Assembly: GCA_965285935.1 (NCBI GenBank) | Contig: OZ260663.1 | Location: forward strand, 75,392,001-75,456,000 | Direction of reading: 5' to 3' | Source of the DNA: Ophelia neglecta | Lineage: Eukaryota | DNA: 64,000 nt | In this document: piece by piece, positions 1 to 61,960 of the stretch | How positions within the stretch are numbered: the stretch's first letter is position 1 | Layout of the letters: each line of letters opens with the position of its first letter | Translations under genes and position numbers: made by a program | The notes under the pieces: generated by a model | The model's database searches: none | What the model was told of the DNA's origin: nothing | Seen by the model: the letters and a program-made list of their open reading frames with translations, nothing else

Positions 1-304
1 GTGAACTATGAATACTCCACCTTACCAATACTGCTCACTGCTTTCCCCTGCACATGATAGCATGCCATAAAAAATCTATTAATTGGGCCAAATAAGCCGT
101 TTAAGCCAGTGAGAATCTATATTCTTTTCGATGTCAGGGAGCTAGGTTTCAAACCAAGGCCAAGCTTATTATTACACGATTCCGAATGGCCAAAAATACA
201 TACCACACTTAGTCTGACATTTCTTAGCCCTTACTGTCTTTGCTCTTCCATGGTGTTCCCAGAACTAGATGAAACTACACCGCGCTGTGCAGCCGCGTAG
301 CAGT
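1..304 (-). pseudogene. Decayed family copy (5' part of exon 2; runs off the left edge of the window)
   Basis: Collinear with the exon 2 5' end of the 52.7 kb gene: acceptor ttctag|actgct at 305-306, upstream ATG at 251 (MEEQRQ*), main-ATG equivalent gaa ATG tca at 220 followed by TAA two codons later, and gatgtcagggag matching gatgcgttcagggag (SLNAS codons). Confidence 0.55.
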
Positions 305-1320
305 CTAGAACATTTACACTGTTAAAACTGCTTGGCGCTATCTGAACTTTAAATACAATTCACAAATATAAGGCACTTTGACATTTCCATTTGCTTACCA
401 AGAAAAAAAGCACTAAGGCGATATCATTTAAGATGGGGCATAATACTGTATGTATAAGTTGCATTACACCGAGACATTATTGTTTAATCAAGTTATAAAA
501 CACCGATATTGCACATGTCCTAGAGTGGCCTACGCTTTATCGGATACATATTGTTGAACAACTGATTTAATATTAACAATTACCATTTACCTTAGCCTAG
601 CGGAAAGACCAAAATAAGAAAAGCAATTTTTTAAATCAATCGTCATTTGCAGAAAATAATCGGATAACACTGATTAAATTACTTGTATTTTTCAAAATAT
701 GTATATTATTTTTCTCCAGTGGTCTTGTAATTTAATAATGTATTTAGTGATTTCTCGATGTGTCAATCGCGCGTGATAACAAGGGAAATTCAAAATTGAA
801 AGAACCGGGAAAGGTCCTATTGCCTGGTTTCATTGATCCCCTTATTGGGCAGTTAATACCCGCGAGTAGATAAAAGGCCGGTGAGCAGGATATGGGAAAG
901 GATACTCGATAAAAACAAACGGCTACCTATTAATGTGCTGTGCTGCAGATGCTGTGGCACGCTGTGTATTTTAGCATGACTGAGGCCGGGGGTAGGGTAG
1001 GGTAGGTAAGCCATCTCCAGACCATACCAGCAGTACAGCAAAGTACCTTTCAGATAGCCAAACAAACTTAGTTTACTTTTAACTAGTATTTATTAAAAAT
1101 TGTATTAGTCAGACACCATACTTCAGAATCAGCACTCAAAACAAAGGAGTCGAAAGCACAAAAATAGAAACCGAGGGAATCCAACTACTAGATAGCGGAT
1201 TGCTGTACTTTCAGTGGTGGATATATGGTTGATTGATGTTTTAATTAGAAAACTAGCTATCCGATTTACTTTTCTCTTTTTTTGTCTACGCACACTAATG
1301 CCACGGCTGTCTTCTGTAAT

Positions 1321-1470
1321 TATATTCCCACTGGGTAGATCATAACTGGATAACAATTACTTAAAAAGTAATTTATGTGTGATATTCAAATTTGGCAGAT
1401 TATTTCACTCAAGTTGTTCAATTTGATGATGGATTAAAAGTTATTTCCCACTAGGTAGATCATAACTGGT
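1321..1470. repeat. Short direct repeat, about 28 bp, period 120
   Basis: ttcccactgggtagatcataactgg (1325) vs ttcccactaggtagatcataactgg (1445). Confidence 0.7.
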
Positions 1471-1679
1471 GTGTCTGATATTGCTTTTCTGCTAGTACGT
1501 GGTTGTAAGTTTAAATTAGATGATCAGTTTTGGCCTTTGGGAAGATCCGAAGTCATTGTACTACTCCTAGCTTCAATACATCTGCGTATTATAACTTGCC
1601 CCTACCGTCAATGTAATCATTTTTTTTCAGCATTCCCAAGATTGCTAGCTTCAAAGCACAAACTAGCAAACATCACATT

Positions 1680-2010
1680 TATTGGCCTTGATTCGGTCTC
1701 AGGCATTGCATTTGTATCTTCTTCCTCTTGCTTTCATCGACTTCTACTAGTTTGGCAAGATGCCATTTTTACATGTAGTATGGCGGTCAAATAAGCATAT
1801 ACAGATGGAGAAGGAATACAGTTGATAGAAATATAGCAGGCGGGTCGCCGATGTTAATACACTTGCTGTTACATGTTGCACAATTTCGTGCCATGCAAGC
1901 AAAATTGATCATCTTCCGTTCCTTCTCTTAGGAAAATGATGTGCGACGAATTGCCAAGGAGCAGGTAATAAACCAGGTCTCATTTTTGTCTGAGAGTCAA
2001 TTGCAGTGGT
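1680..2010 (-). other. Conserved upstream block B, copy 1 (putative exon 1/regulatory block of type-B units)
   Basis: Aligns with 23260-23580, 33040-33250, 47800-48120 and weakly 60780-60920, e.g. cagatggaga...gcgggtcgccgatgttaatacacttgctgttacatgttgcacaatttcgtg. A donor-like cctacc lies at about 1601-1606. Confidence 0.7.
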
Positions 2011-2319
2011 ACGTTCTAGAATATAATAATGCCTTACTAGAAATCCTTACATACTAATCAGTCTTATCCCTTATCAGAACTAAACAGAAATGGAGGGAAA
2101 TGGATTACAGTATGACTGAACAATTATCGAAACGAGGGATGAATAATAAATGGGTAAGTGGGGTATGTACTTCGCAGTGATAATTTAGAATGTAGTTATT
2201 CACAAGAAGCCGAAAGCACCGTTCGAAAGCCACGTTCTTGCAGTGAGTTTGGTGTAGCTATGACTGACAGAGAGCATCCTGCGGATAGTCAGCCGACCTA
2301 GAAACACCAACTCGATGTG

Positions 2320-5689: not shown

Positions 5690-6154
5690 CTACACCTTGC
5701 TGACCTCGTGAAGCAGTGGCATGGTTACCCCGGAAAACGTGTTCTCGTACTCGTCATCCAGGAAGATGCTGGGTTTATAAATGTGATTGTAATGTTCCTG
5801 GGCGTTGTGTGTGCACTGGTGTGTCTGCTCGGGCTGGTCTTCCCTGTCATGGAGAACCCCATAATGACGCGAGCGTCGATTACACTGGTAGTAAGCAATG
5901 GCCAGCAGCACCAGAGCGGTGAGGGTTGCTAGCACCAGACCCCCCACAAGATAGGTATGAGAATTGTACAAATAATGCATATTTATTGGCTCTCGTTCTC
6001 TCACGTCTTTACTGAAAATCATCGTTACCACCGTGGATGTTTTCTTCCTTATAACCACTCCATTTCGAATGGTCGTGGACGATCTTGTTAGTGCGGGTGT
6101 TGTCACTGTCATTGAGGCGTTCAGGGATAACATAGAAACATTTTCAAATGGCAT
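5690..6154 (-). CDS. Copy A: uncharacterised 154-aa single-pass membrane protein with Tyr-motif tail and C-terminal PDZ-binding-like SKV
   Basis: Intact ORF homologous to two other intact ORFs. Hydrophobic segment YLVGGLVLATLTALVLLAIAYY followed by CNRRSR; tail HIYKPSIFLDDEYENTFSGVTMPLLHEVSKV; splice acceptor gttacag|g at 6281-6280. Confidence 0.85.
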   Translation of the reverse strand: MPFENVSMLSLNASMTVTTPALTRSSTTIRNGVVIRKKTSTVVTMIFSKDVREREPINMHYLYNSHTYLVGGLVLATLTALVLLAIAYYQCNRRSRHYGVLHDREDQPEQTHQCTHNAQEHYNHIYKPSIFLDDEYENTFSGVTMPLLHEVSKV

Positions 6155-9200: not shown

Positions 9201-10408
9201 ACCCTCCTCCTACATCCTCTAGAATGCCCGCTGACATCCAAGAGCTAGCCCCCCCCCCCCCAACTCCTTAATAAGCGTTGCTTATAAGCTACGAGACTGC
9301 ATTCAAGATAAAATGGAGCACATCTTTATAAACACCCCCTTTTCCACTGATTTGCTGTAAAATAACTAGTCTTTCATCACGAAAACACTTAATCCTGAAA
9401 GGCACATTAAAAAACGTTTCAAAATGAACTATTTTTTTGGCTAAGGAAAGCAAATGCTTAATAATTTCCTTTTGGGATGGTGTTTCAAACGGCGAAATAA
9501 AACAAATCAACATAATAAAAACAACCATTGCCACCTGCTGTCCCCCCACTGCAGTCTGCAAATCAGGCTGAAAAATACCTGTTCTTGTATAATTTCGCAA
9601 AGTATCTTCAGGTTGATGCGGAAATGTGAAGTGGAGAAAAACTAAATTTTTCTGGAAATGGGAACGATCATTTAATTTGCTTTTAGGAAGCGCGGACCCT
9701 CGGGTGACAAAGACCCAATATGAAAACGCAGGTGGCCCCACAGGTAGCTTTAACCGCCTAAATATGGCCTTGTTGTGCATAGGTCCTTACGACATTAATC
9801 GTCCCAATTACACCCGTGGATAACAACAGATTTGATGATCACAATAATTTCACGTTGTTTTGCAGGATGGGCCGAAGTGATAATAGTACTCACAGATATT
9901 ATCATGAATGTCTTCAAACGCCCTCAGACGTTATTAAAGTTTATAGTATTATGGTTTGCAGCTTGTGGTTAAAAACAAACGTGTTCACAGCAATTTTCAT
10001 GTCGGAATATTTACTCCTCTATCCACTTCAATAACTAGGCGTTGATGACACAAAGGAACCTTCCCTTATTTAAGCGTTTGAATCTGCATCCGATAATGAG
10101 GGTTTTTATTGATAAGCAATGATGTGACGTGAATAAGACTAGGAAGGGGGGGGGGGGGGGCAATGGCATCTGCCTTGACAAAGTATCTATCATAGAAACT
10201 CGACTACCCTCATACTCCGCTTCCATGTTGACTGTTTTCTCACCTCTCAGTGTAAGCAGGTGCATCCCTGCAGGACATTAACCTGCAATAAAGACCTGCA
10301 TTTTTACTCGTCAACGGGCCCTTTGTAAGCGGCAAGTTACCGAGAGCTGCTCATGGCAACTCCCTAACACCCTGCCTGTCTATTCCTATTACACCTAAGA
10401 TTGCCTAC

Positions 10409-10800
10409 CTTTTGTTGGTTGTGGTCTACATAGTCCTCTCCCTTTTAAAATATGCTCACGATTCTCCAGTCGGTGTCAATACTGATCAAATAAGTCAGCT
10501 TTGTTGTGATCATATAAGAGCCTTTCGGTGCCTTAGTATTTTTTCTTTATTGCCACTCCCAGCAATTGTAGTCCGGTTTGTATGCGTCTGAGTGTAAAAA
10601 CATCCTGAGACCAGCTTGCTTGGCTTCTCTTTGGTATCTAGGCGTGTGTACCGCAATGCTGGCGGATAAATCACCAGAGAAGTTGATTTTGGGTCCTTGT
10701 TAAGCGGATTTTGCGAATCAAGTGAGCAATTGGTGGAACGCAAAAAAAGACAATTGTTAGAAGCTGTGGATGGCGGAATGCTGGCGCTGCCAGTGAATCC
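10409..10800 (-). other. Putative non-coding exon 1 of copy A (5' end uncertain); intron 6280-10408
   Basis: Donor AAAG|GTAGG at 10408, at the same relative position as donors at 43761, 55421 and 27664. Confidence 0.55.
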
Positions 10801-10819
10801 AATCAGGCGGTCACTCGGC

Positions 10820-11350
10820 AATCTAACGCGATGGCCGGGAGTTGTGAGAAGATGGGCTGTCAAGTCCGCCGCCCGAGCCATGCTCCTCTAAGCACATTAT
10901 ACCAGCAGCGTTTTGGAGCACATTAACAAGCATGAAACAGCATACCACACAGAGTAGTCATGCCATAGGGACCAACAAGCCTACGGCAACCGCGTAGGAG
11001 TGAGGCCAAAGCACAGCCTTGTTTGTAGAGAAACTGGGCCCTAAGGTTTGAGAGACAATACAACTAAATCCCAACACCATGCTCTGTTCCACTTAAGACA
11101 CAGCTGACTATTATTTGATATTCGAAAAGTCTTATTTCGGTGGTACCTTATTGAAAGCGCAATGGTTCTTCGCAGCACAGAACCAGCAGATGCCAATCGG
11201 GCTTGCCTCCCGTTTAACTAATCACTTCAAAACATAGGCATGACTATTTCAATTGGCTCAATAACGAGCAGTAGATAGCTACGTGCATGCTCAATGAAAA
11301 TAAGACACAAAGATGGAAACTGATAACATAGAAATCCCATCAGTTGAACA
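10820..11350 (-). promoter_or_regulatory. Type-A promoter of copy A with a conserved core (10846-10874)
   Basis: gagaagatgggctgtcaagtccgccgccc is identical at 44207-44235 and has one mismatch at 55871-55899. On the minus strand it contains GGGCGG and TGACAG. About 500 bp further upstream is also alignable. Confidence 0.7.
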
Positions 11351-12730
11351 AATAATAATTTTGTTATGGATGCTTTATACATTTAGAACGGAAGTGACTA
11401 AGATGTGTATCAAGTAGCCTGGAAGTATCACCGTCTATTGTAGACGAATTTGAAAACCCCACCCAAATATGTACTCGGAACAAAAAAAAGAGAAGATAAC
11501 GATTTTTCACACAACACTGGTTACTTTGAAGCCGAGATTAGTCGAACAGCTTCGATTAAGGAACCTCCAATACGGCCATTTTAGACTTGCCAATAACAAA
11601 TTTTTAGTAGGTCTTAGAACCAGCCTATTCACTTCTTTCTTTACCAGATTGATCGGATGCAAGCTAGGCAGCAGGGTGGATATCAATGGAGAGTCGTCCT
11701 GTTGGCCCCCTGTATTCAACGCAGCTCATCCTGTTAAGCCTAAAGATGGCGGGACTAAAATGAAATGCGATCGTGAAATCAGCCTTTGATCACATTAGAA
11801 GACTCACAAGAATATCATTGAGTCGGTTTAAGCAGAATAACTTACTGAGCTCCTTTGAATATTATTGATATGCATTGGCACTGTTGTGCTGCGGTCAATG
11901 CAGCATTCGGTAGGCCTATTCGCCGTACAGTAGCGGATAAGGGTGTCTGTTAATATAGTTTACCAGTTGATATACTTATCTCAAAAATGCACAGGTTACC
12001 TGAAGCAGCCCACATAAGCTTAATTTCACAATTTGGTAGCGAGAATTATGGCACTTAAATATATTTATCCTAGACCATTTCGGAAACAGACCACTCAGAA
12101 ACTCATGAACTACATGCATTGTACACCCATAATCAGTGACATTCAACAGCAACACTACCTATTAGCTCGTGTGTTTTCATGCGGTGCTTGATGAAAAATT
12201 TAAGGATGTTTCGCTTGAGCATTCCGCTCAGTTCCACTCAGCTGCACTCGGCTTAATTGTTTGGCTTTTTCAGCATAAAATTTACTCCTTAAGCGCAAAG
12301 AAAAGGTATGGATATGCTTTTTAATGTATGTCATATAGTTTCGAAAAAAAGTATATATTGCTATTGTTTTCTCCGTGAGAAGTCTTTATATAAATGAATT
12401 GACCTTCATTGGAAACAATTTCTCTTTATTTAACATGTTAAGCTCAAAAATGACTTTCAGCACGTTATGTTAACATGGCAACCGACTTTATGTTGCTTAA
12501 ATTTCCCCTTCGTAGCTAATGCGTATTTGTTCGGAAAAAAGTTTGAAAATGATGCATGTCAACTGTCTTATTTTCATTACAATGCGACTGTTTATCGCCC
12601 AGGTTAAACGGATGACGCCACGTCCTCAATTTCGACATTGCAGATATTAGAAATGAATTATTTATCTGCAAAAAACGGAGTGACTTCCCGGAAGACAAGG
12701 CAAAGAATGCTCAGTTTTTTTCTCTCTTAA

Positions 12731-13412
12731 GGGAGTAGTGCACCATGTTGTCATAAAAAGGGGCAACAATTTAGAACTGATGACATTTAATTGCCCTTCC
12801 AAAGATGAACAGAATATATCAAGACATTAATTGGGAATAACTTTTCCTAACGGCAAAACGCGTTATCAGAGGGTCATGACTTAAAATATAGCATTTTAGC
12901 CCTTTTATTTTAGTTGTAAATACAATTGCAACACCCATAAATCGAGACCAACGTGGATTGGGCCACAAATGGGATATGTACCCACTTTACAATTTTTTTT
13001 AACATTTTTAAAAATTTCGAACAGTGCAAGTTCAATTGGATAGCCTTATAATAAGAAAATATATGTAGCCTCAATGGAAAGATGCTACATGAATTCAGAT
13101 TAAATTTAGGAAATAAAGCTGTAGGAATGTTAGAAGTATAAATGAATCTCTTAAAGCCAATTTAAATGTCTCACCGTTACAGTTCAAAAATCCTAAAATA
13201 TCATTCTTAGCCCTTACCCCCCTATATATTAAATAGATTTAGCTATAGATAATGACCTCCCAATGGGTACATACAGTTTTTTTTAGCTAACTTATATTGT
13301 CATGAGTGGATGTCAGTATGGTGGATGGTTCTGACTATCGTTAAAAGGCCAACTAAGTATCACCATCCTGCATTGTTGCCCCTTTTTCATGAAGGCCTGG
13401 TGGACTACCCCC
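12731..13412. mobile_element. Non-autonomous DNA transposon (Kolobok-like MITE), 682 bp
   Basis: Imperfect TIRs of about 40 bp (gggagtagtgcaccatgttgtcataaaaaggggcaacaat vs reverse complement gggggtagtccaccaggccttcatgaaaaaggggcaacaat), flanked by TTAA at 12727-12730 and 13413-13416. TTAA with purine-initial termini fits Kolobok rather than piggyBac. Confidence 0.8.
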
Positions 13413-13949
13413 TTAATGGTTAAAAGGGCTAAATGAGCGAAGTTAAGAGCATGTTGTTAAAGGAACCTGTACCAATAATATGAAAAAGATACCATAGAAG
13501 TTTCAAAATCAGTAGTGTATGGAGGAGATAACACGTTCTGATCAATGATTAATGCCTCATCCCGCTCGTGTATCTCAGGAGGTTTAACGCTTTGTCAGGT
13601 TCAGTCATTTGTCACGTGCTGGTAGCACTATGGGGACGGAGGGTTGTCTAGCCCGCCATCCATACATCATTATCCACCGCGTTGGTCGATTAGCGATAGA
13701 TCGCTTGACATAAAAATCCTATCCATGTAATTAGTCTCTCTCTGCAATGTGATAAGTCTTCTTAGTATAGGGTACTCGTTTGCAAAACAAAACTGTATCG
13801 AGATAACTGATTTAAAGAAAGTCCACGGGATTTTCCACTCGAAGGGACTACATTTGCTCTTTTTTGCAAGGAAGAGGACTTTTTGAGACTCATTTTGCCA
13901 GCACATTCGATACAAATGCGCCTGAATCCGAAGCTTATACGAATACCTG

Positions 13950-14070
13950 ATCTGAATTTTCCCGTGCACAGATTCAAGCTGGGCCAGTCAACTATTTCAA
14001 GCTATAGGGTACTAACGGTAAAAACCAAACGTAATTAGTATGCATTGCTTTCTGGATGCCGAGTTGGAGG
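13950..14070. repeat. Dispersed duplicated segment, partner at 45410-45530
   Basis: tagggtactaacggtaaaaaccaaacgtaattagtatgcattgctttctggatgccgagtt vs tagggtattaacggtaaagccaaatgtaattagtattcattgggttctggatgctgagtt. Confidence 0.7.
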
Positions 14071-15559
14071 ACTATCCGCCCTAAGCGACTGCCTGAGAAC
14101 TTTCCACACTCTGCGAGGAACAGGATCCACAAAAATGGTCAACTGTAAACGCAGATTGATCGAAATAAAACCAGGAATCTTGGCCAGACATCCCTTGCTC
14201 TAATCACGTACAGAATCTGGACCGTGGTAAACGTGTCTTGAATACAGATCTTCATAACCTTTACACTAGGTTTTTTTTCCTGATTTTCAGAAAACGATGC
14301 AGACAAGGTTGAACAGTTTTGGCCAATAAGATAGCTGCTGCTACTTAGAATTTGTCGCTCCTCCTGAATGATTAAGTGCTCGGAATGTGAAAGTACGTTT
14401 GCCGAGCATATATGATAGATGATGCCTGTCTGTATAAGGGATCACATTTCTGCTTTTTAGTACTACACATTGAATAATATTTTGAACTGTGTGTCTTATA
14501 TTGTTGACTTTTTCTGTTCTCTGGAAAATGACTTGTATACCAAAAATGATCCAAATTGCAAAATGGTAATTCATTTGAAATGAGAAGATACATTTAGAAA
14601 AGACAAAATTAACCAAGACAACATATCGGCAAGAACCCAGTGATTCATATTCTGCTACTTTGCACTCAAAATAAATTTCCATCTGCTTTGGCCCGAAGGA
14701 CCACAACGTGACAGCCGGCCGCTCTAGGTTTTCTCTTTATTATTATTTTATCTAGTCACCAACCTATTTCTCCCTCTAGTGGCACGGGTCATTACTACAC
14801 TGCTGGTACAAAGCTTTTGAGCACCCGACTTTTTAACCCTTAAACCTTACCTCGGGACAAATAATTTGATAGAAACTATGGCTGCATCCGATTGACCAAA
14901 TAATGCCTATACGTGGTGTACACATAATGTCCTACATAAAACTAGCAGTTCATCGCCGTCACTCAAAGTTCCACCCGGGAAGTACTAAGACGTGTTGGAT
15001 ATACTTTCAACCGATATTTCACCCGTTACAAATGTAAAAGAGCAAGTACATTTATTCCCATGACATTGTCCAGTGCCGTTGGCTTCTGCATATGAACGAT
15101 ACAGTTAACTATGCCAGGTCTCTATACCAGAATATTTATCGTACATGTTCTTACATATATCTGAAATTTTGAATAAATGGCCGTCAGCTAATTATTAGAC
15201 ATCGTAGGACTCAGGCTACACAAAGGAAATCTTTACGAATGTGACATGCACACTGAAGACAACTACGTTACGGTCAACGTTATAGAAAAAAATTGGGTTG
15301 GAAGGTATGACTATGATTATATAAATGTCAATAGTGTAAATGAAATAGCGTATATTTGTGTATCTTACAATCATTTTCTATTGACTGCCCTAGTTTACTG
15401 TCGATTCTCGAAAAGGACAAAATTGTAAGTTTCAAGGAATAAAATCGGATCATAAACCTACTGATTCGTCCTTTATAATATTTTAAAGTTATCCTTTAAT
15501 TACTTAATGAGATATTACGACAATAGTTGATAAACCAATTATGGCAGAAGCGTAATTGC

Positions 15560-25589: not shown

Positions 25590-25849
25590 GTCCCGAGGGT
25601 GGCCTCGATGCTTTTCTGCCTGGTAGCATTTCCATTTCTGGCTGTCTTCGATGATCTTGTCACTGGCGCCGTCATCGCGGTGTCCAGAGAGAATCAAAGC
25701 CATCTGCAAGCCACAATTATCTTGATTATCTGATTAGTCGGAGTGCGACGGGAATTAGAATGGCCTGGTTCCCATGGAATGTGATAAAATGGACTTTGAC
25801 GAGAATTTCTTTTCCTGTCACTAATGATTTCAGACATTTGACAGCAGTT
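25590..25849 (-). pseudogene. Truncated type-A family copy (5' half of exon 2; TM and tail missing)
   Basis: ccatttctggctgtcttcgatgatcttgtc aligns to the stalk codons; acceptor AG at 25851-25850; upstream ATG at 25775; main ATG mutated to TTG at 25716; homology ends at a (GT)n/G-run near 25560-25585. Confidence 0.75.
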
Positions 25850-35160: not shown

Positions 35161-35339
35161 TGAGTTGCTTACATAAAAATGGTGACAAATTGTCTATTTC
35201 CCATGCAAATATCCACATAAATACGGATAGTAATTAGAAAATTATATATGCTATCGATACCAGGCAGCGTCGCTTGATGGGTCTTCAATCAAAGGCTAGC
35301 AAAGTGAGACATGAATCAAACATTATTATAAGTATTGCT

Positions 35340-41270: not shown

Positions 41271-41783
41271 TTAAACCTTGCTAACTTCGTACAACATTGG
41301 CATAGTCACACCTGTAAACGTGTTCTCGTACTCTTCATCAAGGAAGACGCTGGGTTTGTAAATATGACTGTAATGTCTCTGTGTATCATGCTTGCACATA
41401 CAATGATGTGTCTGCTCGCAGTCGTCTGCTTCTTCAGGAAGGACGTCATAACGACGAGAACGCCGGTTGCAATGGTAGTAGGCAATTGCCAGCAGCACCA
41501 GGGCGGTGAAGGTTGCCAGCAACAGACCACCCACCAAATAGGCATGAGAGTTGTGCACATAGCGCGTGTGGGTTGGCTCTCGTTCTCTGACGTCTTTACT
41601 GAAAAACAGTTTGACCACAGTGGATGGTTTTTGCCTGATAGTACCTCCATTTCTGGGAGTCGTAGTTAACGGCGGCGTCTTCAAGACCACCGAAGTGTTC
41701 ATGGACAATTCCAGACCACTTGCCATCGACGATTCTCTCGATGAGTTGAGGGCAGAGGGCGAGAAAATTGGTCTACTTTCCAT
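41271..41783 (-). CDS. Copy E: 170-aa paralogue (predicted start MESRPIF at 41783)
   Basis: Acceptor ttctattactgtttcag|a at 41840-41839 makes the N-terminus of the listed 206-aa ORF intronic or UTR. Same TM and tail (HIYKPSVFLDEEYENTFTGVTMPMLYEVSKV). Confidence 0.85.
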   Translation of the reverse strand: MESRPIFSPSALNSSRESSMASGLELSMNTSVVLKTPPLTTTPRNGGTIRQKPSTVVKLFFSKDVREREPTHTRYVHNSHAYLVGGLLLATFTALVLLAIAYYHCNRRSRRYDVLPEEADDCEQTHHCMCKHDTQRHYSHIYKPSVFLDEEYENTFTGVTMPMLYEVSKV

Positions 41784-43761: not shown

Positions 43762-44160
43762 CTTTTGCAGGCATGAGTGTCGCCTACATTGTCTTCTTCT
43801 ATCAGCTGGGGTTCCTTGAAACGCTTTCCTTGGTGCTCGTCTATAGTATTGATTTCCTAAGACAATTTTGTGGCATTTATATTCCCGCCCAGAGTGGCAG
43901 CTTCGTTTATTATGTTCTTTGCCGCAATTTTCGTCAAATGATGTTCAAAGTCTTGTCGTTTTGGGGTGAAAACATCCGAAGCACTGTCTACTCAGCTGCA
44001 CTTCGATAGCTAGAATTCCTATTCACCGTACTACTGGATGATAGAGCACATGATACATCAATGCTGGTACTAAATCTTTATATAGAGGGCTTAGTGAATC
44101 CTCCATGGAAGCATAAGACAAAGGTAAGAAGCTGTAGATGGGAAAGCGCCGCCGGTAAAT
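43762..44160 (-). other. Putative non-coding exon 1 of copy E; intron 41839-43761
   Basis: Consensus donor AAG|GTAAG at 43761; the exon aligns with the blocks starting at 27665 and 55422. Confidence 0.6.
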
Positions 44161-44180
44161 CAAACAAACGCTCGATCTGA

Positions 44181-44770
44181 AATCTAACGCGATGGCCGGG
44201 AGTTGGGAGAAGATGGGCTGTCAAGTCCGCCGCCCAAGTCCGCCTACTCTAAACATATTACGCCGGCATATTTCCGTGGTGATATTGACAAACAGAGAAC
44301 AGCAATACAAACCTGAATGGGCCTGCCATGGAAACCGACAAGTTCACGGCAGGCGGGCCCGAGGGAACCACAGAGAAAACGCTTTTCACAGAGAAATTGG
44401 AACAAACTGGGCAATGATGCATTGGGAAACAATGCAAGACATTGCCAGAATTGCCGGCAACTATTCAATAGAAGACCCATAATAGGAAACAATCCCCTGC
44501 TTCACCGCACATAAGGCCGGGCTCCTGGCGTAGGAACAATCTTATTACGACGAAATTGAGGTCTATTGATTGGTCCTAAAAATTACCTATAGAAGAATGA
44601 AGCCAGTCGGCCGTTCCTCCTATATATATTACAGATCATTTCAGTGCATGGACTTGACATTATCAACGGGCTCAATTATTAGGCGTGCATTTCTCCATGC
44701 TTAATTATAATGAGGAATAAAGATGGAAAATGATAAAACTAAATCCCAACAGTTCAACAAGACTTGGAGT
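44181..44770 (-). promoter_or_regulatory. Type-A promoter of copy E
   Basis: 44181-44235 matches 10820-10874 at 54/55 nt; a CCAAT box (gattggtc on plus) near 44570 is shared with copy F. Confidence 0.7.
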
Positions 44771-45409
44771 GATAAACATGGATACAAAGGAACCTAACAC
44801 TCACAACGCCCATTCTAGATCAATTGAACAAACCCCATCAAGCCCTTTCGCTTGGATCACATAATCTATGACGCGTTTCGAGCATTTTGTATTATTGCGC
44901 TGCTAGTCTCTCGCACTCCGATCAGTGGTAAGGCTGGTTCTCTAAGAGAAAAACCGGACAGTGTCGGGACGGTATAAGCCAAATCAATGCCCTATTTTCT
45001 GTAGCTCGTTAGACCAACTGTTGGACAAACCGTTTAACATCTCATGATATGTCAGGGTTATTTTTATCATGCGCCGGAAGTACACGTACTATTTAAAGGG
45101 TTGTCTCGGCCTAGTCTATGTTCCACGGAGGTGGCTGATTAAACATAAAGATTGTTTGAACTCAATCTAATTCCTAGGATCGAACGCCCAGAATGTAATG
45201 CAATCAAATTTCGTAGAATATTCTTCAGCAGTATAAAAACCTTCATATAAAAGCTGTTTTGAAGAAAGTATCAAGGGGTTGCCCAAATTAGGGTTATATT
45301 TATTTAATAAATGATTGCGATAATTATTCATTTTTGCAGGCTTCTTCTGATGAAACCTATTACTCTGTGGCGGAATCTGGATTCTTACTTGTGTCTTTAA
45401 AGGGGCGAC

Positions 45410-45530
45410 ATCTGAATTCACCTAGGTGCTGATTTAAGTTTTAGACGGTCTAGATTTTGAGCTTCTAGGGTATTAACGGTAAAGCCAAATGTAATTAGTA
45501 TTCATTGGGTTCTGGATGCTGAGTTCGGGG
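45410..45530. repeat. Dispersed duplicated segment, partner at 13950-14070
   Basis: Same alignment as the 13950 entry. Confidence 0.7.
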
Positions 45531-45644
45531 GTCAAAATAGATATAAAGTCAAATTAAAACCTGCAACCTGGAATTTCGGATATCTACTCATACAATAACT
45601 CTTTTTAAAACATAGCAAAGACATCCATGATAACCATGTTATTT

Positions 45645-52734: not shown

Positions 52735-53208
52735 TTACACCTTGCTGACCTCGTGAAGCAGTGGCATGGTCACCCCGGAAAACGTGTTCTCGTACTCGTC
52801 ATCCAGGAAGATGCTGGGTTTATAAACATGATTGTAATGTTCCTGGGCATTGTGTATGCACACACACTTATCTGTCTGCACCGACCGCTCTTCTCCGTCG
52901 TGGAGTATGTCGTAATGACGAAAACGTCGGTTATACTGGTAGTAGGCGAGAGCAAGCAGCACCAGAGCGGCGAGGGACGCGAGCACCAGACCCCCAGACA
53001 TGAAATACGTATGAGAATTTAACGCATAATGCGTGTCTTTTGGTCCTCGCTGTCTTACATCGTTACCGATAAACAGGGTGACCACAGTGGATGGTTTCCG
53101 CCTCATAGAACTTCCACTTCTGGTGGTCGTCGACAATCCTGTCAAAGGCGGTGCCTTCGCGACAGCTGATGCGTTCAGGGAGAATTCTAGGTCATTTGAA
53201 AATGACAT
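52735..53208 (-). CDS. Copy F: 157-aa paralogue
   Basis: Intact ORF with in-frame stops upstream of ATG 53208; acceptor attccag|g at 53332-53331; TM YFMSGGLVLASLAALVLLALAYY; same tail. Confidence 0.85.
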   Translation of the reverse strand: MSFSNDLEFSLNASAVAKAPPLTGLSTTTRSGSSMRRKPSTVVTLFIGNDVRQRGPKDTHYALNSHTYFMSGGLVLASLAALVLLALAYYQYNRRFRHYDILHDGEERSVQTDKCVCIHNAQEHYNHVYKPSIFLDDEYENTFSGVTMPLLHEVSKV

Positions 53209-53267: not shown

Positions 53268-55421
53268 AGTATGGGACACTGGCAACGAGATTCCCTTATT
53301 ACAATCGATTTTACCAGCCGTCAGCAGGCCCTGGAATAATTAAAAACTGCCAATGTGATTCCTTAATAAGACACATGATTCAAGCAAATGTAAACCAAAT
53401 GTCACAATTGTGACAACAAATATTGAATCACAACTGTGACAACAAAATTGAAATGAAATAAAATACACTTAGGCTAATGCAATCTATCGTATACACATCG
53501 GCGCCCAATGATGTCATCAACTGTACCACTACGATCACAATTAGTGTACTACGGATTAAAAAATACAAACTAAGATATCATGCGTACAAGGGCCATTATT
53601 TTATCAAAGAATGCTTTCTATATTTATGGATGAAGAAGATAAGTTACTTTTCAATAACCACCTGCTTTTTCATTGCTTTCGCTGTTGTCTTAGATTTATA
53701 TTCAGAGTTTTAGGTACAAAAAGGAAAACGCTAACCGTAAGATAACTCCAGACCCGACCATTTCGCCCCCCCCCCCCCCCAACTCCCCGACTGGGACGAA
53801 ATATAATATAGAAAAACAATTACTCTTTCGCAAACAAATTCTGGTCTTGGAATTAAGGCTAAGCTGTCTAGAACATCGTTTGGCACCGTACGTACATTAA
53901 TAGTGATTATGATATAACTTATTGCCTTATACAAGAATACAAATAGTAGTTTAAAACAATCAAGGGAAATTAGTAACAAGAACAACATGGGTTATGGGTT
54001 ACCGTTAATTATTACACCAATAATTTCACACTTATCGTTGTTTAATACATTTCATTGATCAAACCATGCTTAATGTACTACTTATTGACTATTAGAACCT
54101 AAATATTTAGGGGTTGCGTTCTTAAACGTTTCTACTTTTTATTAAGAAAAATCAGGGGGTCAATCATTTAGTTATATTGCGTTACATATGGCATATGCAG
54201 TGGAAAGTTTGACACAAAATAACCCTTGACGGGACAGGATGTATGAAGAAATATCGCCCGCTCTGGATGAAAATGCTATACCCAGATTTTGCACAATCTC
54301 CAGTGGTGCCCCATTGCCGTGGGTGTCAAAACAAGATGGGTCGAATAGGGCTGGAACAACCAAACTTTAGTTGTTCTAGAATAGGGACTCCTTCCAATAA
54401 AAATATAATTTAGATTGTGTTTATTAAAAGAAAATGGTTCACCATCCGAATAAAATGATTTTATATGCCCATTACCAAGATTTTGCATCGCAATCCACAC
54501 TGTCAAGATCCACAAATAAATCGTTAGTACTCGCATAATAAACAGAAGATAAAATACTACCCTGGCAGGCATTAAGACAGTTACACAAAGCAGTAACACA
54601 ATATACAAGGCGTCATTTAGGTGGTTACACAATTTGAAAACAAACCGTCATACCAAATTCTATCAAAGCATTTCTCGGCAACAAGAAGTGCCACAAATAA
54701 CAATTGCGTCTGAAAAAAACCTAATAGTGAAAACGAGATTCATATATAGTCAAGGCGACTGTTATACTTAGATAAGCTGGTGGAATCATCTGTAGTCCCT
54801 AAGAAATGGGAAATGGACGGCGCTTTCCCTCGTCTACTTAGAGGGATAAATAACTAGCAGCAGGCTAGAATCTAAACATGAACAGTGAAAAAGGAAGTCA
54901 GCCATTGAATATATATATTTTGAATCACCTTCAACCCGAAGGTACCCTTTTACAGGCCCTCAATGCCTGTGTTATACTTAGACAAATTTAACTGGTAGAG
55001 TTCAAACCCTGGATCAATAAGTGCTACACCAAGCTACGAGTCTTTGGTTATCACCAGACAAAGCATGTGATCTTAAAAAGCTAGATAGTTGAAAAAATGC
55101 CTTTTCGAGAGGAACTTTAGTACCGCGAAACAACTCATCCCTAGTGGATTGGTTCGCATCACACAGCCGAGATCAAAGCCTCCTTTCCCTCAACCGGCCA
55201 TTAAAAAGGCATAAGGACTATTAATTAAATACCTCATTAACTTAATGCTCCCCCCTTAATTTTTTTGTCGCCCCGCCATTGGCGGCTGCATGTCGCCTGT
55301 GAACCACGACCGGAAAAATAAACATGCTCAGCTTGCGCTCATTTTACAAGACACATGTCCCTAGCTTTATGACTAATGGAAGACTACTTGCACGGATTAT
55401 ATCTATACTAAAATTCCTCAC

Positions 55422-55830
55422 CTTTTGCTGGGTGTCATCTACATTGTTCCCTTTTGTCCAAGGCTCCCTCAAATGCTTTCTTAGGTGCTATGCGAATGAT
55501 TTCCTAAGGCAATATACTGGCAGTCATATTCCGTACACAGCGCAGGTTGCCCCAGTGTGTTTTTATGGCCGCTTATGGCATGTAATAATATGGTGTTTCC
55601 GGTGTAACGTTGTCTGGTGTAAAAGATATCCCAAGCACTGCTTAATGCTTACATTTACAAGCAGTTTCAATGCCTTTGTCCTGAAAAACGCCAGCTTGAG
55701 TACAAAGTCTTCGCCACCTTAGCTTTACCGCAGGAAACTGATATCCACTTCCGAATCGTTGGAATCCATGGTGGTGCAAATAGACAATTGTTAAAGCTGA
55801 GATAAGAAAGCGCTGGGGAGGAATTCAATC
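55422..55830 (-). other. Putative non-coding exon 1 of copy F; intron 53331-55421
   Basis: Donor AAG|GTGAG at 55421; tgatttcctaag.caat is shared with the exon 1 copies at 27.7 and 43.8 kb. Confidence 0.6.
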
Positions 55831-55839
55831 AAGCGCTCA

Positions 55840-56430
55840 CTCCGCAATCTACGCTATAGCCGTGAGTGATGAGAAGATGGGCTGTCAAGTCGGCCGCCCC
55901 AGCCAGCCTCCTCTAAACATGCTTCCCGGCAGGTTTCTAGAGCACACTAACAAAACACACAGGAAAGTGCGTTAAGAGGACCTGCCAAGGTGACCAACAA
56001 GATCGCAATAGCAACGCCAGAAAAAAGCCAATAAGAAAGCAATGTTTGCGGAATAACTTGGAACACAGCAGTTTGGAGACGATGGAATAAATTGCTAGCG
56101 ATAACTGTAACTGTTCAATAAAAGAACCATAACGTAGAACAATTTTCTGAGTCACTAATAGCCCAGCTGCCTGGTGCAGGACAATCTTATTTCGCCCAGA
56201 TTGAGAGCTATTGATTGGTCATAAAACAAAATCTAGTAGAGGCCAGTCGGCTATGCCTCCCTTCTAACCGATCACTTCAGAACACATTACATAGACCTGA
56301 CAGTATCAATGGGCTCACTAACGAGCCGTGGCTTTCGTAGGGCTCAATCTATATAAGGCAAGAATTGAAACTTTACAAAACGAAATGCTCCTCAGTTGAA
56401 CAGACGATTGTTTGGTGGTAAGTATTTTAT
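55840..56430 (-). promoter_or_regulatory. Type-A promoter of copy F
   Basis: Core 55871-55899 (28/29 identical to copies A and E) plus alignable upstream sequence with a CCAAT box. Confidence 0.7.
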
Positions 56431-57127
56431 CTATTCAAAATTAGAGTGATGGAGATAGTATATGTGTGGGAAAACCTGAAACTGTTTTGGTCCGTTGTAG
56501 AACAATTGATAAAATCTAATCGAAGTTTCCCTCGGAACAAACCAAAGACGGTAGGACTTATCGAACATTTATTTCTCATGCACCACTAGTTTCTTCCAAA
56601 GGCTGAAGACCTGAATATCTGTAAAGTCGGCTCAATGTGTTTGGTGCTGCGCTGTCGGAGCTTGGCTGCGCGAGAACAAAACGAGTATCCTGACTAACCT
56701 AGCCGAGAGCAGCGGGCCAAGAAAACGCACAGCGCACAAAGCGCCGAATACCGAGACCCGTAAAGAGTGGTAGCAAAATTGAAGTCCCAGAGGGACGTTT
56801 TTGCACAAATCAATGGCACATTGTGTCTGTCTCTTAGGAGCAACACATAGAAGTCGTTCTTTATTGGCATTACTTTGGCCACATAACAATCACTGGATCA
56901 TTGTGCAGGTTAGAAGAGAGATTTACCGGCTTACTGACTAGGCTTTTACGACTAGAAGGTCAACCTATATTGACCGAAGTCCATGTCGACCGAATGAGGG
57001 TCTCGGGATTAGCCGGAAAACGCTTTGGAGAATCAAATGTTCATTGATTATCTAAGTGAAATGAAGTGAAAATTATTTTGGCATAAAATTACGTGAAACT
57101 TCATTTACAGCAAACAATGCAAACACG

Positions 57128-57250: not shown

Positions 57251-58810
57251 ACGTTAAGGAGAAGTAGTGGTTCCAAGAAACTAATTGTATCCCCCAGATC
57301 TAAAATTATTATGCATTTATTACATTTAATACATAAGAATTGACCACGGCCTGATGTTCAAATATTGCGTTAAAAAAATCACGGGGAGCATTTGAATCGC
57401 TTCTCTGACATTGTTTTCTTCTTCCCTGGTCATTCTCATATTGCATTTATTACCATTTCAAACCCAGCCATTTTCTAAGTATAAAAGTGAGCATAATCTG
57501 AAACATCACATTTGTCATTCATATAAATGGCAAATTTATTAAATGTATTAATATAGTTTGATTTATCTATTTCGGATGGCTGGTCAAACAATTTTATTTA
57601 TTCAGGTAATTGAAGTATATGATTTTGGTGCTGCCGGATCATATTGCTTGTGTGGAAAAAGTGAAATTTTCCTCTTTCCTCTTTGGTTTTATTTTTATCA
57701 TCTAACAGAATTTCTCGACATTGGTCTATTGATTGTTCAGAGCCATTAGTGGTTTTCACACTAGATTTATTGGTTATAGTATGGCTGAGGAGAAAGCATC
57801 TGAGCGAAGAAAACAATGCTAAAAAGGGCTGTACTACTGACAGAAAAAGAATATCGTAGTAATTGGACACACACAAAAGCAGGACTGTATCCAGGACACA
57901 GCACAGTGTTGATTAAAGATTAATGCTTCATTCCCATCGATATCTCAGAAGGTTGAATGTTTATACCTTCGTCATCAACGTTTGTCATGAGCTGCTACAG
58001 CTGATACTCTAGGAACGGAAGCTTGCCTGGCCCTGTATATATATATATCATTTTCCACCGGGCCGGTCGATTAACCATAAATCGTTTGGCATTAAAAGTA
58101 ATTCCCAGCAATCAGGCATCCATAAGGCGATCAGACTTCCTGGGATACACGTCCTTAGTATAAAAAAGCCTACCAACTTGTTTTATGGAAAATCGAATTA
58201 ATATTCATAGCAGTCTGGATGCTGGTGTGGGCGGACTACGTGTCTTGAAGGTGGACGGGGCTTTTAAACAACAAGATCCTGGAAAAGGGAGTAAAAATAT
58301 GTATACAGATATACGTCCGAGGAGTCTTAACCAGCATCAGTCGCTCATATATTTAACTGCATTGTTTAGAACAATTTGTACTATACTTATAATATAAAAA
58401 TCTATACATTTGCTTGCTGCTAGTTGGTAAAATATCAAAAAGATAAAGCCGATAAGACTTGTATGAAGAGTATGGTTCATTGTGTGTTAATGTGGTCATT
58501 CTTTAAATTAATATGTAATATTGATGCGAATATAAGGCAACCGCAAGCGGAATGATTTGTAGCAAAGCGGCATTTAAGAATCTTTTATGAATCTTTTATC
58601 ATAAATAAAATGAAAATTATAGCCACTGTGGTATGGTTGATCGTAACTCCTGTAATAGAGCTGTTTTCTATTTGATAAATGCATTTAGTGTGACGCTTTA
58701 TTTACAAACTTAAGGCTCTTTTCAGGATGCAGAAATAATATTAGGCTTGTGCAAGACGTGGAATGATTGTAAGCAAAAATCGTAAGATCAGCAATTACAG
58801 ATAAAAGAAT

Positions 58811-59330
58811 TCACACATAATAGACCCTCTTAAAGACAGTGATCAACGGGATATGTGCTTAAAACGCCTTTTCATGACAGCATATTGGCTGTTTTGGTGA
58901 CCTACTTCTCCGTGGGAAAGTTTCTTTCCCAGATCTGTGTTCTGCAATACTGACCATCCTCATCATGAAGACGTCTTCTCTGTTAAAAGTCGTCTGCTGT
59001 TATCTATTCTTCCCACCAGTCCGCTGGTGCTAAGTGTGCCCAGAAGCCTGGTGGAAATCAACCAGATGAACATCTTGGCATAAATTCGATTGTTTTTCTT
59101 CTGTGCCCCGCTCATCAAAGGAAATTGACGTCTGCTTCTGGGAATGCAACATGAAATAAGCCACTTTCAACTTAAGTTTCTGTTACTGTGGCTTCACTCG
59201 AGACATATTTGTCTTGCATGCTCTACCGTGATTATGCGTTTTTCGACTTGAGGTTATCCGACCCTAATAGGAAAGCCTGCTTGAAATCGGATCCCTGAAT
59301 TGATTGTCTGTCTTCTCCTTAAAGGTCGGG
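58811..59330 (-). pseudogene. Decayed, roughly full-length type-B family copy
   Basis: Aligns with 29760-30200. Residual NNRIYAKMFIWLISTRLLGTLSTSGLVGRIDNSRR and LHDEDGQ; ends gtg tga (V*) at 58811 in a context resembling the intact 3' ends. Confidence 0.55.
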
Positions 59331-60779
59331 CAATGCCAGCTATTTTGGGCTGACTTCCCCACTGTCAAACAGGACTGTCAGTTTACCATCTCTAAGGCTC
59401 TTAATCTTCTTAATACTTAATTTGAAAATTATAGATAGAAAGTGAAGCCGACATTGGATCCATTTTAAGAAGATTCTAACATCAAATTACCCCGTTATAA
59501 ATGTAACTTAATCAACGTTCAAATAACATACATTACCATGGCAATTTCAAAATACCACAGTTTGATAATGGGGATGGTCTTCACCGGCCTAAGATGCACC
59601 AATTTGCATCATGCAAGCTGCTTCGTGCTACCTTAAAGACAGAGGTTATGATATTGATATATTTCAATTCATATCAACTAACCTAAAGGCATCTCGTTGC
59701 TGGTGCTTGAGTTTTTCAGCATGTGTAGTTAAAATGCTTTGGACGGGTTTTAATGTCACTTTTAACTAGAGCTGTCAATCCAGTTTTCAAATCCCATTAA
59801 TATGAACCATAAGAGCAGATTTTGAGTGTCTGTGCTGTTTCGATGCTCTGGGTGGGTATAGGACAGATCACACATGTTTCTGACGTTAATAGTAGGCCTA
59901 CTTCGAATATATGCCGCCGTTCTAACGGCATCCAAACTCGTATTGGAGACATCAAAGGCTAAATGTCTTATCGTCTAACAAAATGCAAAAGTGAGTTTTC
60001 TTTCGTTTGTTAATTGAGCTAGTAGAAAAGAAATTGTTAGATAAAAGGTAGGATAAATCTATAAAACTGTGTGCAACTGCCTCTCATTCAAGCAACCCCA
60101 TATATACTCTCTGTAAGCCTGATGGAATCCTTTGGACTCCACAAGTCGTCAAGGCTTGTGTTATACATGGATACATTGGTATTATATTTATATGTGAATT
60201 TTGGAAAATGCTCGTTTTATATACAGTCGAGTTTATAACAGTAATTTAGACACCAGAACTATGTGTCTTTTGTTAAAATCAAACAGAAAAGCACAAGCAC
60301 TTAAAAATAATGGCCACAAGTCTCGAAATGTTCATCTTAGGAAAGTATATCTAAATAAAACCATCGATTGGGGATGCCAATTGAGTATTAAAGTTATTAG
60401 AATGATGGATACATTTCCTTAACATATTGCTTGAATAATTTGTCATTAAATGAAAATAAATAATCTATAAACCTACAGGAGTCACATATCGTACTCAGAA
60501 GTGGGTAGAAACCAGCAGGTTGCTCCCGTTAGAATACCAGTATTATGAAACCTCACTACCCATCGCCTGAAAAAAACGATATTGTCATTGAGGACATTAA
60601 GTAACTCGACAAATTGGGGCAGCATTGACATTCAGTGCGTGATCTCTACTTGTCCCTCAATAGTTTGTTGCCTTTGGCGAAATTACAACAATGGGATTTT
60701 CCTTGAACAATGTCAAGGGAATGATTATACGGCGGATGTTGCATGCTTCATTTCATCTTACACTCATGTACAGACATAA

Positions 60780-60920
60780 ATGTACAAAAGAAAAACATAT
60801 GTGATGAAGGATGACTTTGATCAAACATTATTGTACAGCATGAGCAGAGATAAGTGCTGCTCTATTTTTTCAATATTTCTGAAATGATTCCGTCTTACAC
60901 TGGCTCTGTCCTGTTCCTCA
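60780..60920 (-). other. Probable block B, copy 5 (degraded)
   Basis: tgtac..aaacat..gatg..aga..tgctg..ctgttcctc with spacing similar to 23354-23506. Confidence 0.4.
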
Positions 60921-61639
60921 GGGGAAATTTCATTTCCGAGATCTGCCTGTTTAGTATAATCTCTTCATATGTATCAGTGGACACAATTAGTTCTTGTGAG
61001 GTCTCCAAGGATGTATGTTTATCCGTTTGGATAAAAGTGCGTAAATCAAGCATACTTTCAAAAACTATAGTCTAGGCCATGAAAAGACTCAGGCGAAAGA
61101 GTCAGGCGTATATCTGGTAGACTTTCTTCTCCATTGGTTTAGTATTTAAATGTCTATACCTGTTTCGACGGGCGAGAACATTATAGATCACTTTAATTAT
61201 CCTAATGCATGCTTTTCTTCTGACATTGCAATATGCGGCGACGAATGTTCGAGGACACATTTGATAAAAAAAGAAAATAAAGGTATTCCTATTTGCCCAT
61301 AGACCTAGTGGCATTTTACCGATACCAATCAAAATTGATTTATATAATATGTTTTTATATGGGCACTATACACATTTCGTTTTTTTACGGAAATGAAATT
61401 GAATGATTGGTGTTGCTACTGTTGTCTTCCCAGATTATCTTCATTGTTATGTTCTAGTTACTATTATCTTAACAGCCTTGGGATGTAAAAGACTGCTGTG
61501 GCTTTGAGTGATCTATTCCGCTCATTCTAGGGCTAGGGGCATTTTCATTTTTACTTGGATGGGAAAGGTTAAATACAATCATTTTCAGTGCCTACAACGG
61601 GGCCCCTTTGGGATTTTTTTTAAAGCATTGGGAGGAGGT

Positions 61640-61960
61640 CCACCTTGTTCAAGATACGACGCCAGTAAGGTGAAAACCATTATTTACATTTTTTGTTTAT
61701 TTGTTGCTCCTCTGTAGGCGAGTAGGTAGAGTTTAGACAGATATGTTCTTGGAATAGCATATAATTTACCGGAGAAGTCAGCCATTTTGTGCATTAGGTT
61801 CACCACACATGTATATAGGCAGAGGACCTGTTATTTTTACAGCTATGACTACCACCTCGGGGATGTCTGCAGAACTGCTGTTCTTTTTTCGCTTCAGATT
61901 GGCTGTCGGCGGTGACCTCGGTACTAAACTTATACACTAGCTCTTGAGTGCGATTGTCGA
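61640..61960 (-). pseudogene. Possible heavily deleted type-A copy
   Basis: Short anchors in the right order: caccttg, gaaaac, gtaggcgag, ataggca, tggctgtcggcggtga (15/16 identical to about 35084-35099). Spacing requires deletions. Confidence 0.3.

What the first reader, a model, noticed from the sequence alone, without database searches (positions are those of the whole stretch)
1..61960. The window is a hidden tandem array of about 10-11 copies of an unrecognised small membrane-protein gene, only 3 intact
Seen: three intact paralogues plus collinear, same-strand remnants at about 0, 15.6, 25.6, 29.7, 35.0, 45.7, 58.8 and perhaps 61.7 kb, most with their own upstream block. Established: high pseudogene fractions in tandem arrays typify birth-and-death evolution, common in immune and recognition loci. 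Inference: this is a lineage-specific, rapidly turning-over receptor/adaptor cluster that probably extends beyond the window. I cannot confirm that it is undescribed without a database search.
Basis: partly seen in the sequence, partly recalled or inferred. Interest (0 to 1): 0.8.

Follow-up and report, generated by a model that had tools for sequence, protein, structure and literature searches.

The report
Tandem membrane-protein genes, three intact
The window holds an old tandem array of a small membrane-protein gene, with three working copies, two broken ones and one nearly erased. That is about half the count first claimed, and the protein belongs to a wider, unnamed family of marine invertebrates with a highly conserved intracellular tail.

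Summary
The three intact minus-strand genes are real (CDS 5690-6154, 41271-41726 or longer, 52735-53208). They are under purifying selection and are the only copies in this 762-Mb invertebrate genome.

Profile searches confirm two of the claimed remnants, at 25.6 kb and 35.0 kb. Both are 5' halves of the coding exon that have lost the transmembrane segment and tail. Each of the five copies has its own 1.1-kb upstream block.

The claimed remnants at 29.7, 45.7 and 58.8 kb lie in or beside other blocks (X, Y, Z) of the same repeat unit, and the 15.6 kb one lies about 0.9 kb beyond the nearest such block. None of these blocks resembles the gene. Nothing is found at 0 or 61.7 kb.

The array does run past the window. 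One unit with its CDS deleted starts at 63.2 kb. Two more relics lie about 39-44 kb to the left, beyond a 34-kb satellite.

The protein is not an orphan. A search of 1.84 billion representatives found 34 relatives that share the transmembrane segment and a near-invariant C-terminal tail (YxYIYKP, LDDEYENTFxGV, PLL, [ST]-x-[VI] end). No Pfam family, source name, solved structure or paper covers it.

Function (a tyrosine/PDZ-docking adaptor) is inferred only. No RNA data exist for this organism.

The parts
5690..6154 (-). Gene A, intact CDS (154 aa). The coding exon probably starts at 6279, after a conserved branch point, pyrimidine tract and CAG.
41271..41726 (-). Gene B, intact CDS core (151 aa from Met56). 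The open frame runs up to 41891, and the predicted acceptor puts the first exon base at 41838.
52735..53208 (-). Gene C, intact CDS (157 aa). The predicted first exon base is 53330.
25598..25928 (-). Pseudogene D: only the 5' half of the coding exon. The canonical ATG is lost, there are indels, and homology ends at a C-run plus CA microsatellite. No transmembrane segment or tail remains.
34990..35359 (-). Pseudogene E: only the 5' half of the coding exon. The acceptor is lost, there are a 20-base deletion and further frameshifts, and homology ends just before the transmembrane segment.
10394..11550 (-). Upstream block of A (promoter and/or non-coding exon 1). The core 11239-11363 is conserved in the related species.
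27658..29225 (-). Upstream block of D, in three pieces.
37350..37885 (-). Upstream block of E, 5' part only. The core 37589-37714 is conserved in the related species.
43721..44859 (-). Upstream block of B. The core 44651-44760 is conserved in the related species.
55381..56617 (-). Upstream block of C. The core 56294-56413 is conserved in the related species.
13403..14719 (-). Distal blocks X, Y, Z of unit A (13403-13798, 13931-14269, 14606-14719). Non-coding and not gene-like.
45048..45534 (-).
57770..59179 (-).
29740..30028 (-).
1664..2049 (-). Downstream block of unit A. Other copies lie at 23251-23620 (D), 33027-33268 (E), 47830-48181 (C) and 39 kb left of the window. No reading frame is favoured.
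63246..63306 (-). Tentative 3'UTR scrap of unit F. Its upstream block lies just outside the window at 64677-65232, and the CDS appears to have been removed by a deletion of about 2 kb.

Best explanation
The locus is an old head-to-tail array of one repeat unit. In gene orientation the unit reads Z, Y, X, upstream block, intron of about 1.8-4 kb, coding exon, downstream block.

Eight units can be recognised over about 110 kb. Five have exon-2 homology inside the window:
- A, B and C are intact.
- D and E keep only the 5' half of the exon.
- F, at the right edge, has lost its CDS.
- G and H lie left of a 34-kb satellite.

Shown: the gene's whole CDS sits in one exon and encodes about 155 residues. 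The protein has no N-terminal signal peptide and a Ser/Thr-rich segment of about 65 residues with a conserved N-x-S sequon. One transmembrane helix follows, then a basic stop-transfer stretch and a tail of about 63 residues.

Shown: the tail carries the signature of a wider, unnamed family. That signature is a juxtamembrane Cys-x-Arg-Arg and YxxL, then YxYIYKP, then LDDEYENTFxGV, then PLL, and a final [ST]-x-[VI].

Inferred: the protein is a type III (N-out, C-in) plasma-membrane glycoprotein that works as a docking adaptor. Its C-terminus would bind a class I PDZ scaffold. The acidic YEN tyrosine, once phosphorylated, would recruit a Grb2-type SH2 protein. The YxxL/I motifs may add endocytic sorting.
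For: Array:
- nhmmer E-values are 1e-20 to 0 for exon 2 and for the upstream blocks.
- The blocks keep the same order in every unit.
- Units C and F are sisters, and F has a deletion.

Real genes:
- dN/dS is 0.20-0.37 between paralogues and 0.12-0.13 against the other-species copy. The tail (0.12-0.32) is more constrained than the outer part (0.24-0.48).
- A 120-base upstream core is 66-70% identical across species even though dS is saturated.

Single coding exon with an upstream acceptor:
- An in-frame stop lies 12 codons before the ATG of A.
- The CAG acceptor and its upstream context are conserved in A, B, C and the relative, and degraded in D and E.

Family:
- 34 representatives score E<1e-3, and all match through the transmembrane segment and the extreme C-terminus.
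- In the 36-sequence alignment, six positions are invariant (Y126, Y136, T139, F140, G142, P146) and others nearly so.
- All 36 have Ser or Thr at position -2 and V, I or L at the C-terminal position.

Topology:
- There is one hydrophobic 19-mer (Kyte-Doolittle 2.3-2.6) and no N-terminal hydrophobic stretch.
- The sequons lie on the N-terminal side and the Arg-rich stretch on the C-terminal side.
Against: There is no RNA evidence: no RNA run was found for this organism. Exon 1, the transcription start and expression are therefore all unproven.

No binding partner has been tested. The invariance of T139, F140, G142 and P146 goes beyond what an SH2 or PDZ ligand needs, so the tail may serve a different, unknown partner.

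The F scrap rests on a 61-base match (E 4e-4 in a small search). Unit H rests on the downstream block alone.
Confidence: 0.7

Rival explanations
1. One reading: 10-11 gene copies in the window, forming a rapidly turning-over, lineage-specific immune or recognition receptor cluster.
For: Dead copies sit among live ones, and the array continues past the window. One weak protein-level hit lies at 45642-45866 (E 1.8).
Against: Six of the eight claimed remnants fail the profile test. The repeats at 29.7 and 58.8 kb are block Z, which is not gene-like. The outer part of the protein is short, not confidently modelled and under purifying selection. Copies are old. The family occurs in other species.
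Confidence: 0.05
2. Each unit was originally a dimer, and blocks X-Y-Z are the relic of a second, much older gene copy. That would give roughly the reader's count.
For: X, Y and Z recur in a fixed order upstream of each gene. Chance-level exon-2 hits lie at 13840-13881 and 45642-45866, next to these blocks.
Against: The two weak hits fall in inconsistent positions relative to X and Y: a 5'UTR part between Y and X in unit A, and a coding part 5' of Y in unit B. The X, Y and Z profiles hit no exon 2 or upstream block at E<=1. The exon-2 profile hits no X, Y or Z at E<=200.
Confidence: 0.07
3. The protein is not a signalling adaptor. It would be a small auxiliary subunit or trafficking chaperone of a channel or transporter, as KCNE, FXYD and the sodium-channel beta subunits are. 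On this view the conserved tail acts mainly as a sorting signal (YxxL/I, PLL) plus a PDZ anchor.
For: The size and single-pass layout are the same. Sub-threshold PDB profile matches fall on KCNE2 and sodium-channel beta-2 through the transmembrane region (E 0.4-0.5). YxxL/I motifs are conserved at Y98 and Y122.
Against: The matches are not significant and are confined to the hydrophobic helix. The transmembrane segment is less conserved than the tail across the family, whereas auxiliary subunits usually conserve the helix that contacts the channel.
Confidence: 0.2
4. D and E are not dead. Their upstream blocks and truncated exons would still be used, for example as promoters of non-coding transcripts or as alternative 5' exons.
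For: Both keep the upstream block, and E keeps the cross-species core. Another follow-up on this genome reported alternative first exons in a different gene.
Against: The acceptor is degraded in D and lost in E, the frames are broken, and no donor was identified at the point where homology ends. In the intact genes the whole CDS is one exon, so there is nothing to splice onto.
Confidence: 0.05

Closest known systems
Transmembrane adaptor proteins of vertebrate leukocytes (LAT, NTAL/LAB, PAG, SIT)
   Same: They have a very short outer part, one helix, a juxtamembrane cysteine, and an unstructured tail whose acidic Y-x-N tyrosines recruit Grb2. This comparison rests on my own knowledge of these proteins.
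   Different: No sequence homology was detected. There is only one YxN motif here. The tail ends in a PDZ ligand. The cysteine is a single residue and is absent from copy C.
Syndecan, neurexin, glycophorin C and Crumbs type short tails
   Same: A single-pass protein with a short conserved tail that combines a juxtamembrane tyrosine-containing motif with a C-terminal PDZ-binding end. The profile gives a sub-threshold match to the neurexin-1 stalk and helix (E 0.07).
   Different: The tail motifs are unrelated in sequence. The match is not significant and does not cover the tail. There is no large ectodomain.
TMEM154, opalin, PIK3IP1 fragments, SMAGP (nearest clusters in the protein atlas)
   Same: Small mucin-like single-pass proteins, with feature scores of 0.91-0.93.
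   Different: The shared-feature counts (144-152 of 256) are in the range the tool gives for chance hits or distant relatives. Pfam TMEM154 does not match A, B or C, and reaches only 20 bits in one relative against a cut-off of 30.3.

Membership tests
Unnamed 'YENTF-tail' family (defined here from the database hits) | One transmembrane helix followed by a basic stretch (C-x-R-R) and a conserved Y-x-x-[LI] | tested here: met
   Y98 is present in 33 of 36 sequences, and R93 and R94 in 24-25 of 36. A, B and C all have them.
Unnamed 'YENTF-tail' family (defined here from the database hits) | C-terminal signature YxYIYKP ... LD[DE]EYENTFxGV ... PLL at the very end of the protein | tested here: met
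   The profile E-value is 3e-34 to 8e-31 for A, B and C. The invariant positions are all present, with HY-x-H in place of the first Y-D-Y.
Unnamed 'YENTF-tail' family (defined here from the database hits) | Class I PDZ-type end: [ST] at -2 and V, I or L at 0 | tested here: met
   A, B and C end in S-K-V. All 36 sequences fit. Binding itself was not tested.
TMEM154 (PF15102) | Score at or above the Pfam gathering cut-off | tested here: not met
   A, B and C give no hit at E<=10. The best relative scores 20.1 bits against 30.3.
ITAM adaptors (DAP12, FcR gamma type) | Two YxxL/I motifs spaced 6-12 residues apart, and an acidic residue in the helix | tested here: not met
   The second tyrosine motif is Y-E-N-T, and the helix has no Asp or Glu.
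   The genome has only three copies. RT and endonuclease domains are confined to the separate LINE at 18181-21927.
Signal-peptide-bearing type I membrane proteins | A cleavable N-terminal hydrophobic signal | tested here: not met
   The best N-terminal 12-mer hydropathy is 0.7-1.3. An in-frame stop before the ATG of A rules out an exon-1 extension through the conserved acceptor. Without RNA this remains inconclusive for other splice forms.

The most novel reading that the evidence does not exclude
The 35-residue tail is an undescribed, deeply conserved docking module of marine invertebrates. Six positions are invariant in 36 sequences whose outer parts no longer align. It would define a new class of single-pass adaptor that couples a PDZ scaffold to phosphotyrosine signalling, or binds a so far unknown partner through the invariant T-F-x-G ... 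P-L-L core. In this genome the adaptor has been triplicated, with diverged outer stalks.
Probability: 0.3. Interest if true: 0.55.

Novelty: new variant of a known kind. Interest (0 to 1): 0.35.

Why it matters
The array itself is an ordinary tandem gene cluster with decayed copies.

The more useful result is the protein family. It is a set of small membrane glycoproteins whose intracellular tail is almost frozen across distant relatives, yet it has no Pfam model, no source name, no solved structure and no paper in the library searched. A tail this conserved should have a specific, testable binding partner. The three paralogues here would give a natural series with a constant tail and a varied stalk.

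The case also shows how conserved non-coding blocks of a repeat unit can be mistaken for extra gene relics.

Tried and rejected
- RNA evidence: the one run search returned only three DNA-like holders from a single study. I therefore did not use read laying, and the exon 1 model stays open.
- Rfam over the whole window found nothing.
- AlphaFold2 on the four-sequence alignment gave only the transmembrane helix (mean pLDDT 51), so I ran no fold search.
- Protein atlas searches returned only look-alikes by general layout.
- PDB searches by sequence and by profile found nothing significant.
- Paper searches for the YENTF motif returned only irrelevant hits, and those for the assembly and run accessions of the relatives returned none. 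The species range of the family is therefore not established.
- L005:1904-2365 was first taken as a second 153-aa copy in the related contig. It does not align and is unrelated.
- The downstream block was tested for coding potential by tblastx. All six frames scored alike, so it is non-coding.
- Block W (B 43292-43508, D 27230-27428, unit G, and the relative) contains a donor-like AAG|GTTAGC and was considered as the end of exon 1. It was not found in A or C.
- Weak collinear hits at about 70.2 and 73.0 kb right of the window (E 0.2-4.5) were not accepted as a further unit.
Full report
**Setting**

The window is G000:C5:75392001-75456000 of a 762-Mb, 223-contig eukaryotic assembly. GC content is about 38%. 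The mitochondrial contig is 17.8 kb, reads TGA as Trp, and carries nad1-nad3-trnS-nad2-cox1. That points to a bilaterian invertebrate. Unchecked notes by other agents on this genome call it a lophotrochozoan, probably an annelid.

**The three genes**

ORF listing and tblastn confirm three minus-strand paralogues:
- A: 5690-6154, 154 aa.
- B: 41271-41891. The core runs from Met56 at 41726.
- C: 52735-53208, 157 aa.

A six-frame search, a DNA search and a family-profile search of the whole genome find only these three.

dN/dS:

| Comparison | dN/dS |
|---|---|
| Between paralogues, whole CDS | 0.20-0.37 |
| Against the copy from another species, whole CDS | 0.12-0.13 |
| Tail only | 0.12-0.32 |
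| Outer part only | 0.24-0.48 |

dS between paralogues is 0.6-1.0. These are real, old, constrained genes, and the outer part shows no sign of diversifying selection.

**Gene model (inferred)**

About 112-125 bases upstream of the ATG, copies A, B, C and the other-species copy share a CTCAC-type branch point, a pyrimidine tract and a CAG. Homology stops some 50-70 bases further up. In D the tract has a deletion and the CAG reads TAAG; in E the CAG is lost.

An in-frame stop lies 12 codons before the ATG of A. The CDS is therefore contained in this exon, and exon 1 would be non-coding.

A block of about 1.1 kb lies 1.8-4.1 kb upstream of each copy. Its 120-base core is 66-70% identical to the related contig L005, although synonymous sites are saturated. 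I read it as the promoter, possibly with exon 1. No RNA run was found for this organism, so this is not shown.

**The remnants**

An nhmmer profile of the coding exon, run with filters off, gives two significant extra hits, both on the minus strand: 25598-25928 and 34990-35359 (E 5e-31 and 1e-20; E 1e-65 and 1e-70 once they are included in the profile).

Both cover only the 5'UTR and the first 40-60 codons.
- D has lost the canonical ATG, carries indels, and ends at a C-run and CA repeat.
- E has a 20-base deletion and further frameshifts, and ends just before the helix.

Nothing significant is found at 0, 15.6, 29.7, 45.7, 58.8 or 61.7 kb with the DNA profile (E up to 200) or the protein profile (E up to 50).

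**What the other 'remnants' are**

Sensitive self-comparison and block profiles show one repeat unit with a fixed order. On the plus strand it reads down block, coding exon, upstream block, X, Y, Z.

- Block Z lies at 29740-30028 and 58901-59179.

The X, Y and Z profiles do not hit exon 2 or the upstream block, and the reverse searches are also blank. The down block shows no preferred reading frame. DNA searches of the genome with blocks X (C copy), Z (C copy) and down (A copy) found at most two further copies, so these are not high-copy repeats.

**Extent of the array**

- Right side: a sixth upstream block lies just outside the window, at 64677-65232, with block X at 65828-65992. It is sister to unit C (support 93/93). 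The only trace of its exon is a 61-base match to the 3' flank of C, at 63246-63306. The spacing implies a deletion of about 2 kb that removed the CDS.
- Left side: a satellite of about 34 kb with a period of about 483 bases fills -38.1 to -3.9 kb. Beyond it lie a down block (-39294 to -38917) and a further unit. That unit has an upstream block at -44054 to -43278, plus X, Y and Z.

That makes eight recognisable units, three of them intact. The tree of units is star-like, with terminal branches of 0.2-0.5 substitutions per site. This indicates an old expansion, not rapid turnover.

**The protein**

There is one hydrophobic 19-mer (residues 69-87 in A) and no N-terminal signal. The first 60 residues contain 15-16 Ser or Thr, and one N-x-S sequon is invariant. 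An Arg-rich stretch follows the helix. AlphaFold2 models only the helix with confidence. N-out, C-in topology is inferred from the charge bias and the position of the sequons.

**Relatives**

Pfam gives nothing for A, B or C. The word-based search found one protein, P0001, at 55% identity. It comes from a 33-kb contig of another organism, with one copy in the 18.5 kb held here.

Because the claim rests on an absence of relatives, I ran the full HMMER search over 1.84 billion representatives. It returned 34 proteins at E<1e-3. All are small proteins with a variable Ser/Thr/Asn-rich N-terminal part, one helix, and the same C-terminal tail reaching the last residue.

In the 36-sequence alignment, Y126, Y136, T139, F140, G142 and P146 (A numbering) are invariant. 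Y98, P128, D133, E137, N138, V143 and L148 are nearly so. Position -2 is always Ser or Thr, and the last residue is V, I or L.

- None of the ten relatives scanned reaches a Pfam cut-off.
- None of the relatives looked up carries a source name.
- No PDB chain matches significantly.
- No relevant paper in the library contains the motif.

The sources are unannotated invertebrate-type assemblies and a Tara Oceans metagenome scaffold.

So the gene is not an orphan of this lineage. It is a tandemly expanded member of a wider family for which no description was found in the libraries searched. The local subfamily (A, B, C, P0001, P0002) differs from the family consensus in three ways. It has HY-x-H in place of YDY, Ser in place of Val after NTF, and His in place of Gln after PLL.

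**Mechanism (inferred)**

The tail combines four elements:
- a class I PDZ ligand;
- an acidic Y-E-N tyrosine of the kind that binds Grb2-type SH2 domains once phosphorylated;
- two YxxL/I motifs;
- an invariant T-F-x-G ... P-L-L core with no obvious known reader.

The most likely role is a membrane docking adaptor. A trafficking or auxiliary-subunit role is the main rival. None of this was testable with the tools available.

**Verdict**

The copy count and the six other remnant sites are not supported.

The immune or recognition reading and 'rapid turnover' are not supported. 'Undescribed' holds in the sense that no curated family, source name or paper was found, but 'lineage-specific' does not.

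Noticed in passing
G000:C5, window coordinates about -38100 to -3900 (loci L011-L014): A satellite array of about 34 kb with a period of about 483 bases and 92-98% identity between units. It includes blocks in inverted orientation and sits inside the gene array, where one unit's exon and upstream block would be expected.
   Followed up: partly
window 18181-22927, minus strand: A decayed LINE. The endonuclease, reverse transcriptase and zf-RVT domains are split over three overlapping frames, with a 230-aa upstream ORF that has no Pfam match. It is inserted between units A and D and explains their wider spacing.
   Followed up: partly
window 5690-5795 versus 52735-52840: The last 35 codons of A and C are almost identical at the DNA level (dS 0.10, against 0.44-0.76 in the other parts of the CDS; 95% identity in a 60-base window). 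This suggests gene conversion or constraint on synonymous sites in the tail-coding region.
   Followed up: partly
window 11239-11363, 44651-44760, 56294-56413, 37589-37714; L005:6248-6370: A 120-base core of the upstream block is conserved between species at 66-70% identity. A CCAAT-containing stretch lies just 3' of it in A, B and C. It is a candidate core promoter or enhancer.
   Followed up: partly
window 43292-43508, 27230-27428; window coordinates -44515 to -44306; L005:7658-7725: A small conserved block (W) lies between the upstream block and the coding exon in units B, D and G and in the related species. It contains a donor-like AAG|GTTAGC and may mark the end of exon 1. It was not detected in A or C.
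   Followed up: partly
window 41733-41891: In B the open frame extends upstream through an ATG at 41783. In A and C the matching ATG starts a short separate upstream frame. The further ATG at 41891 lies beyond the predicted acceptor, so it would be intronic.
   Followed up: partly
window 38756-39012: A tandem duplication of a 129-base unit (2 copies, 92% identity) in the spacer between units E and B.
   Followed up: no
G000:C223 (loci L007, L008): The 17.8-kb mitochondrial genome has genes on both strands, 21 tRNAs found by ARAGORN, and the arrangement trnL-trnS-nad1-nad3-trnS-nad2-cox1.
   Followed up: partly
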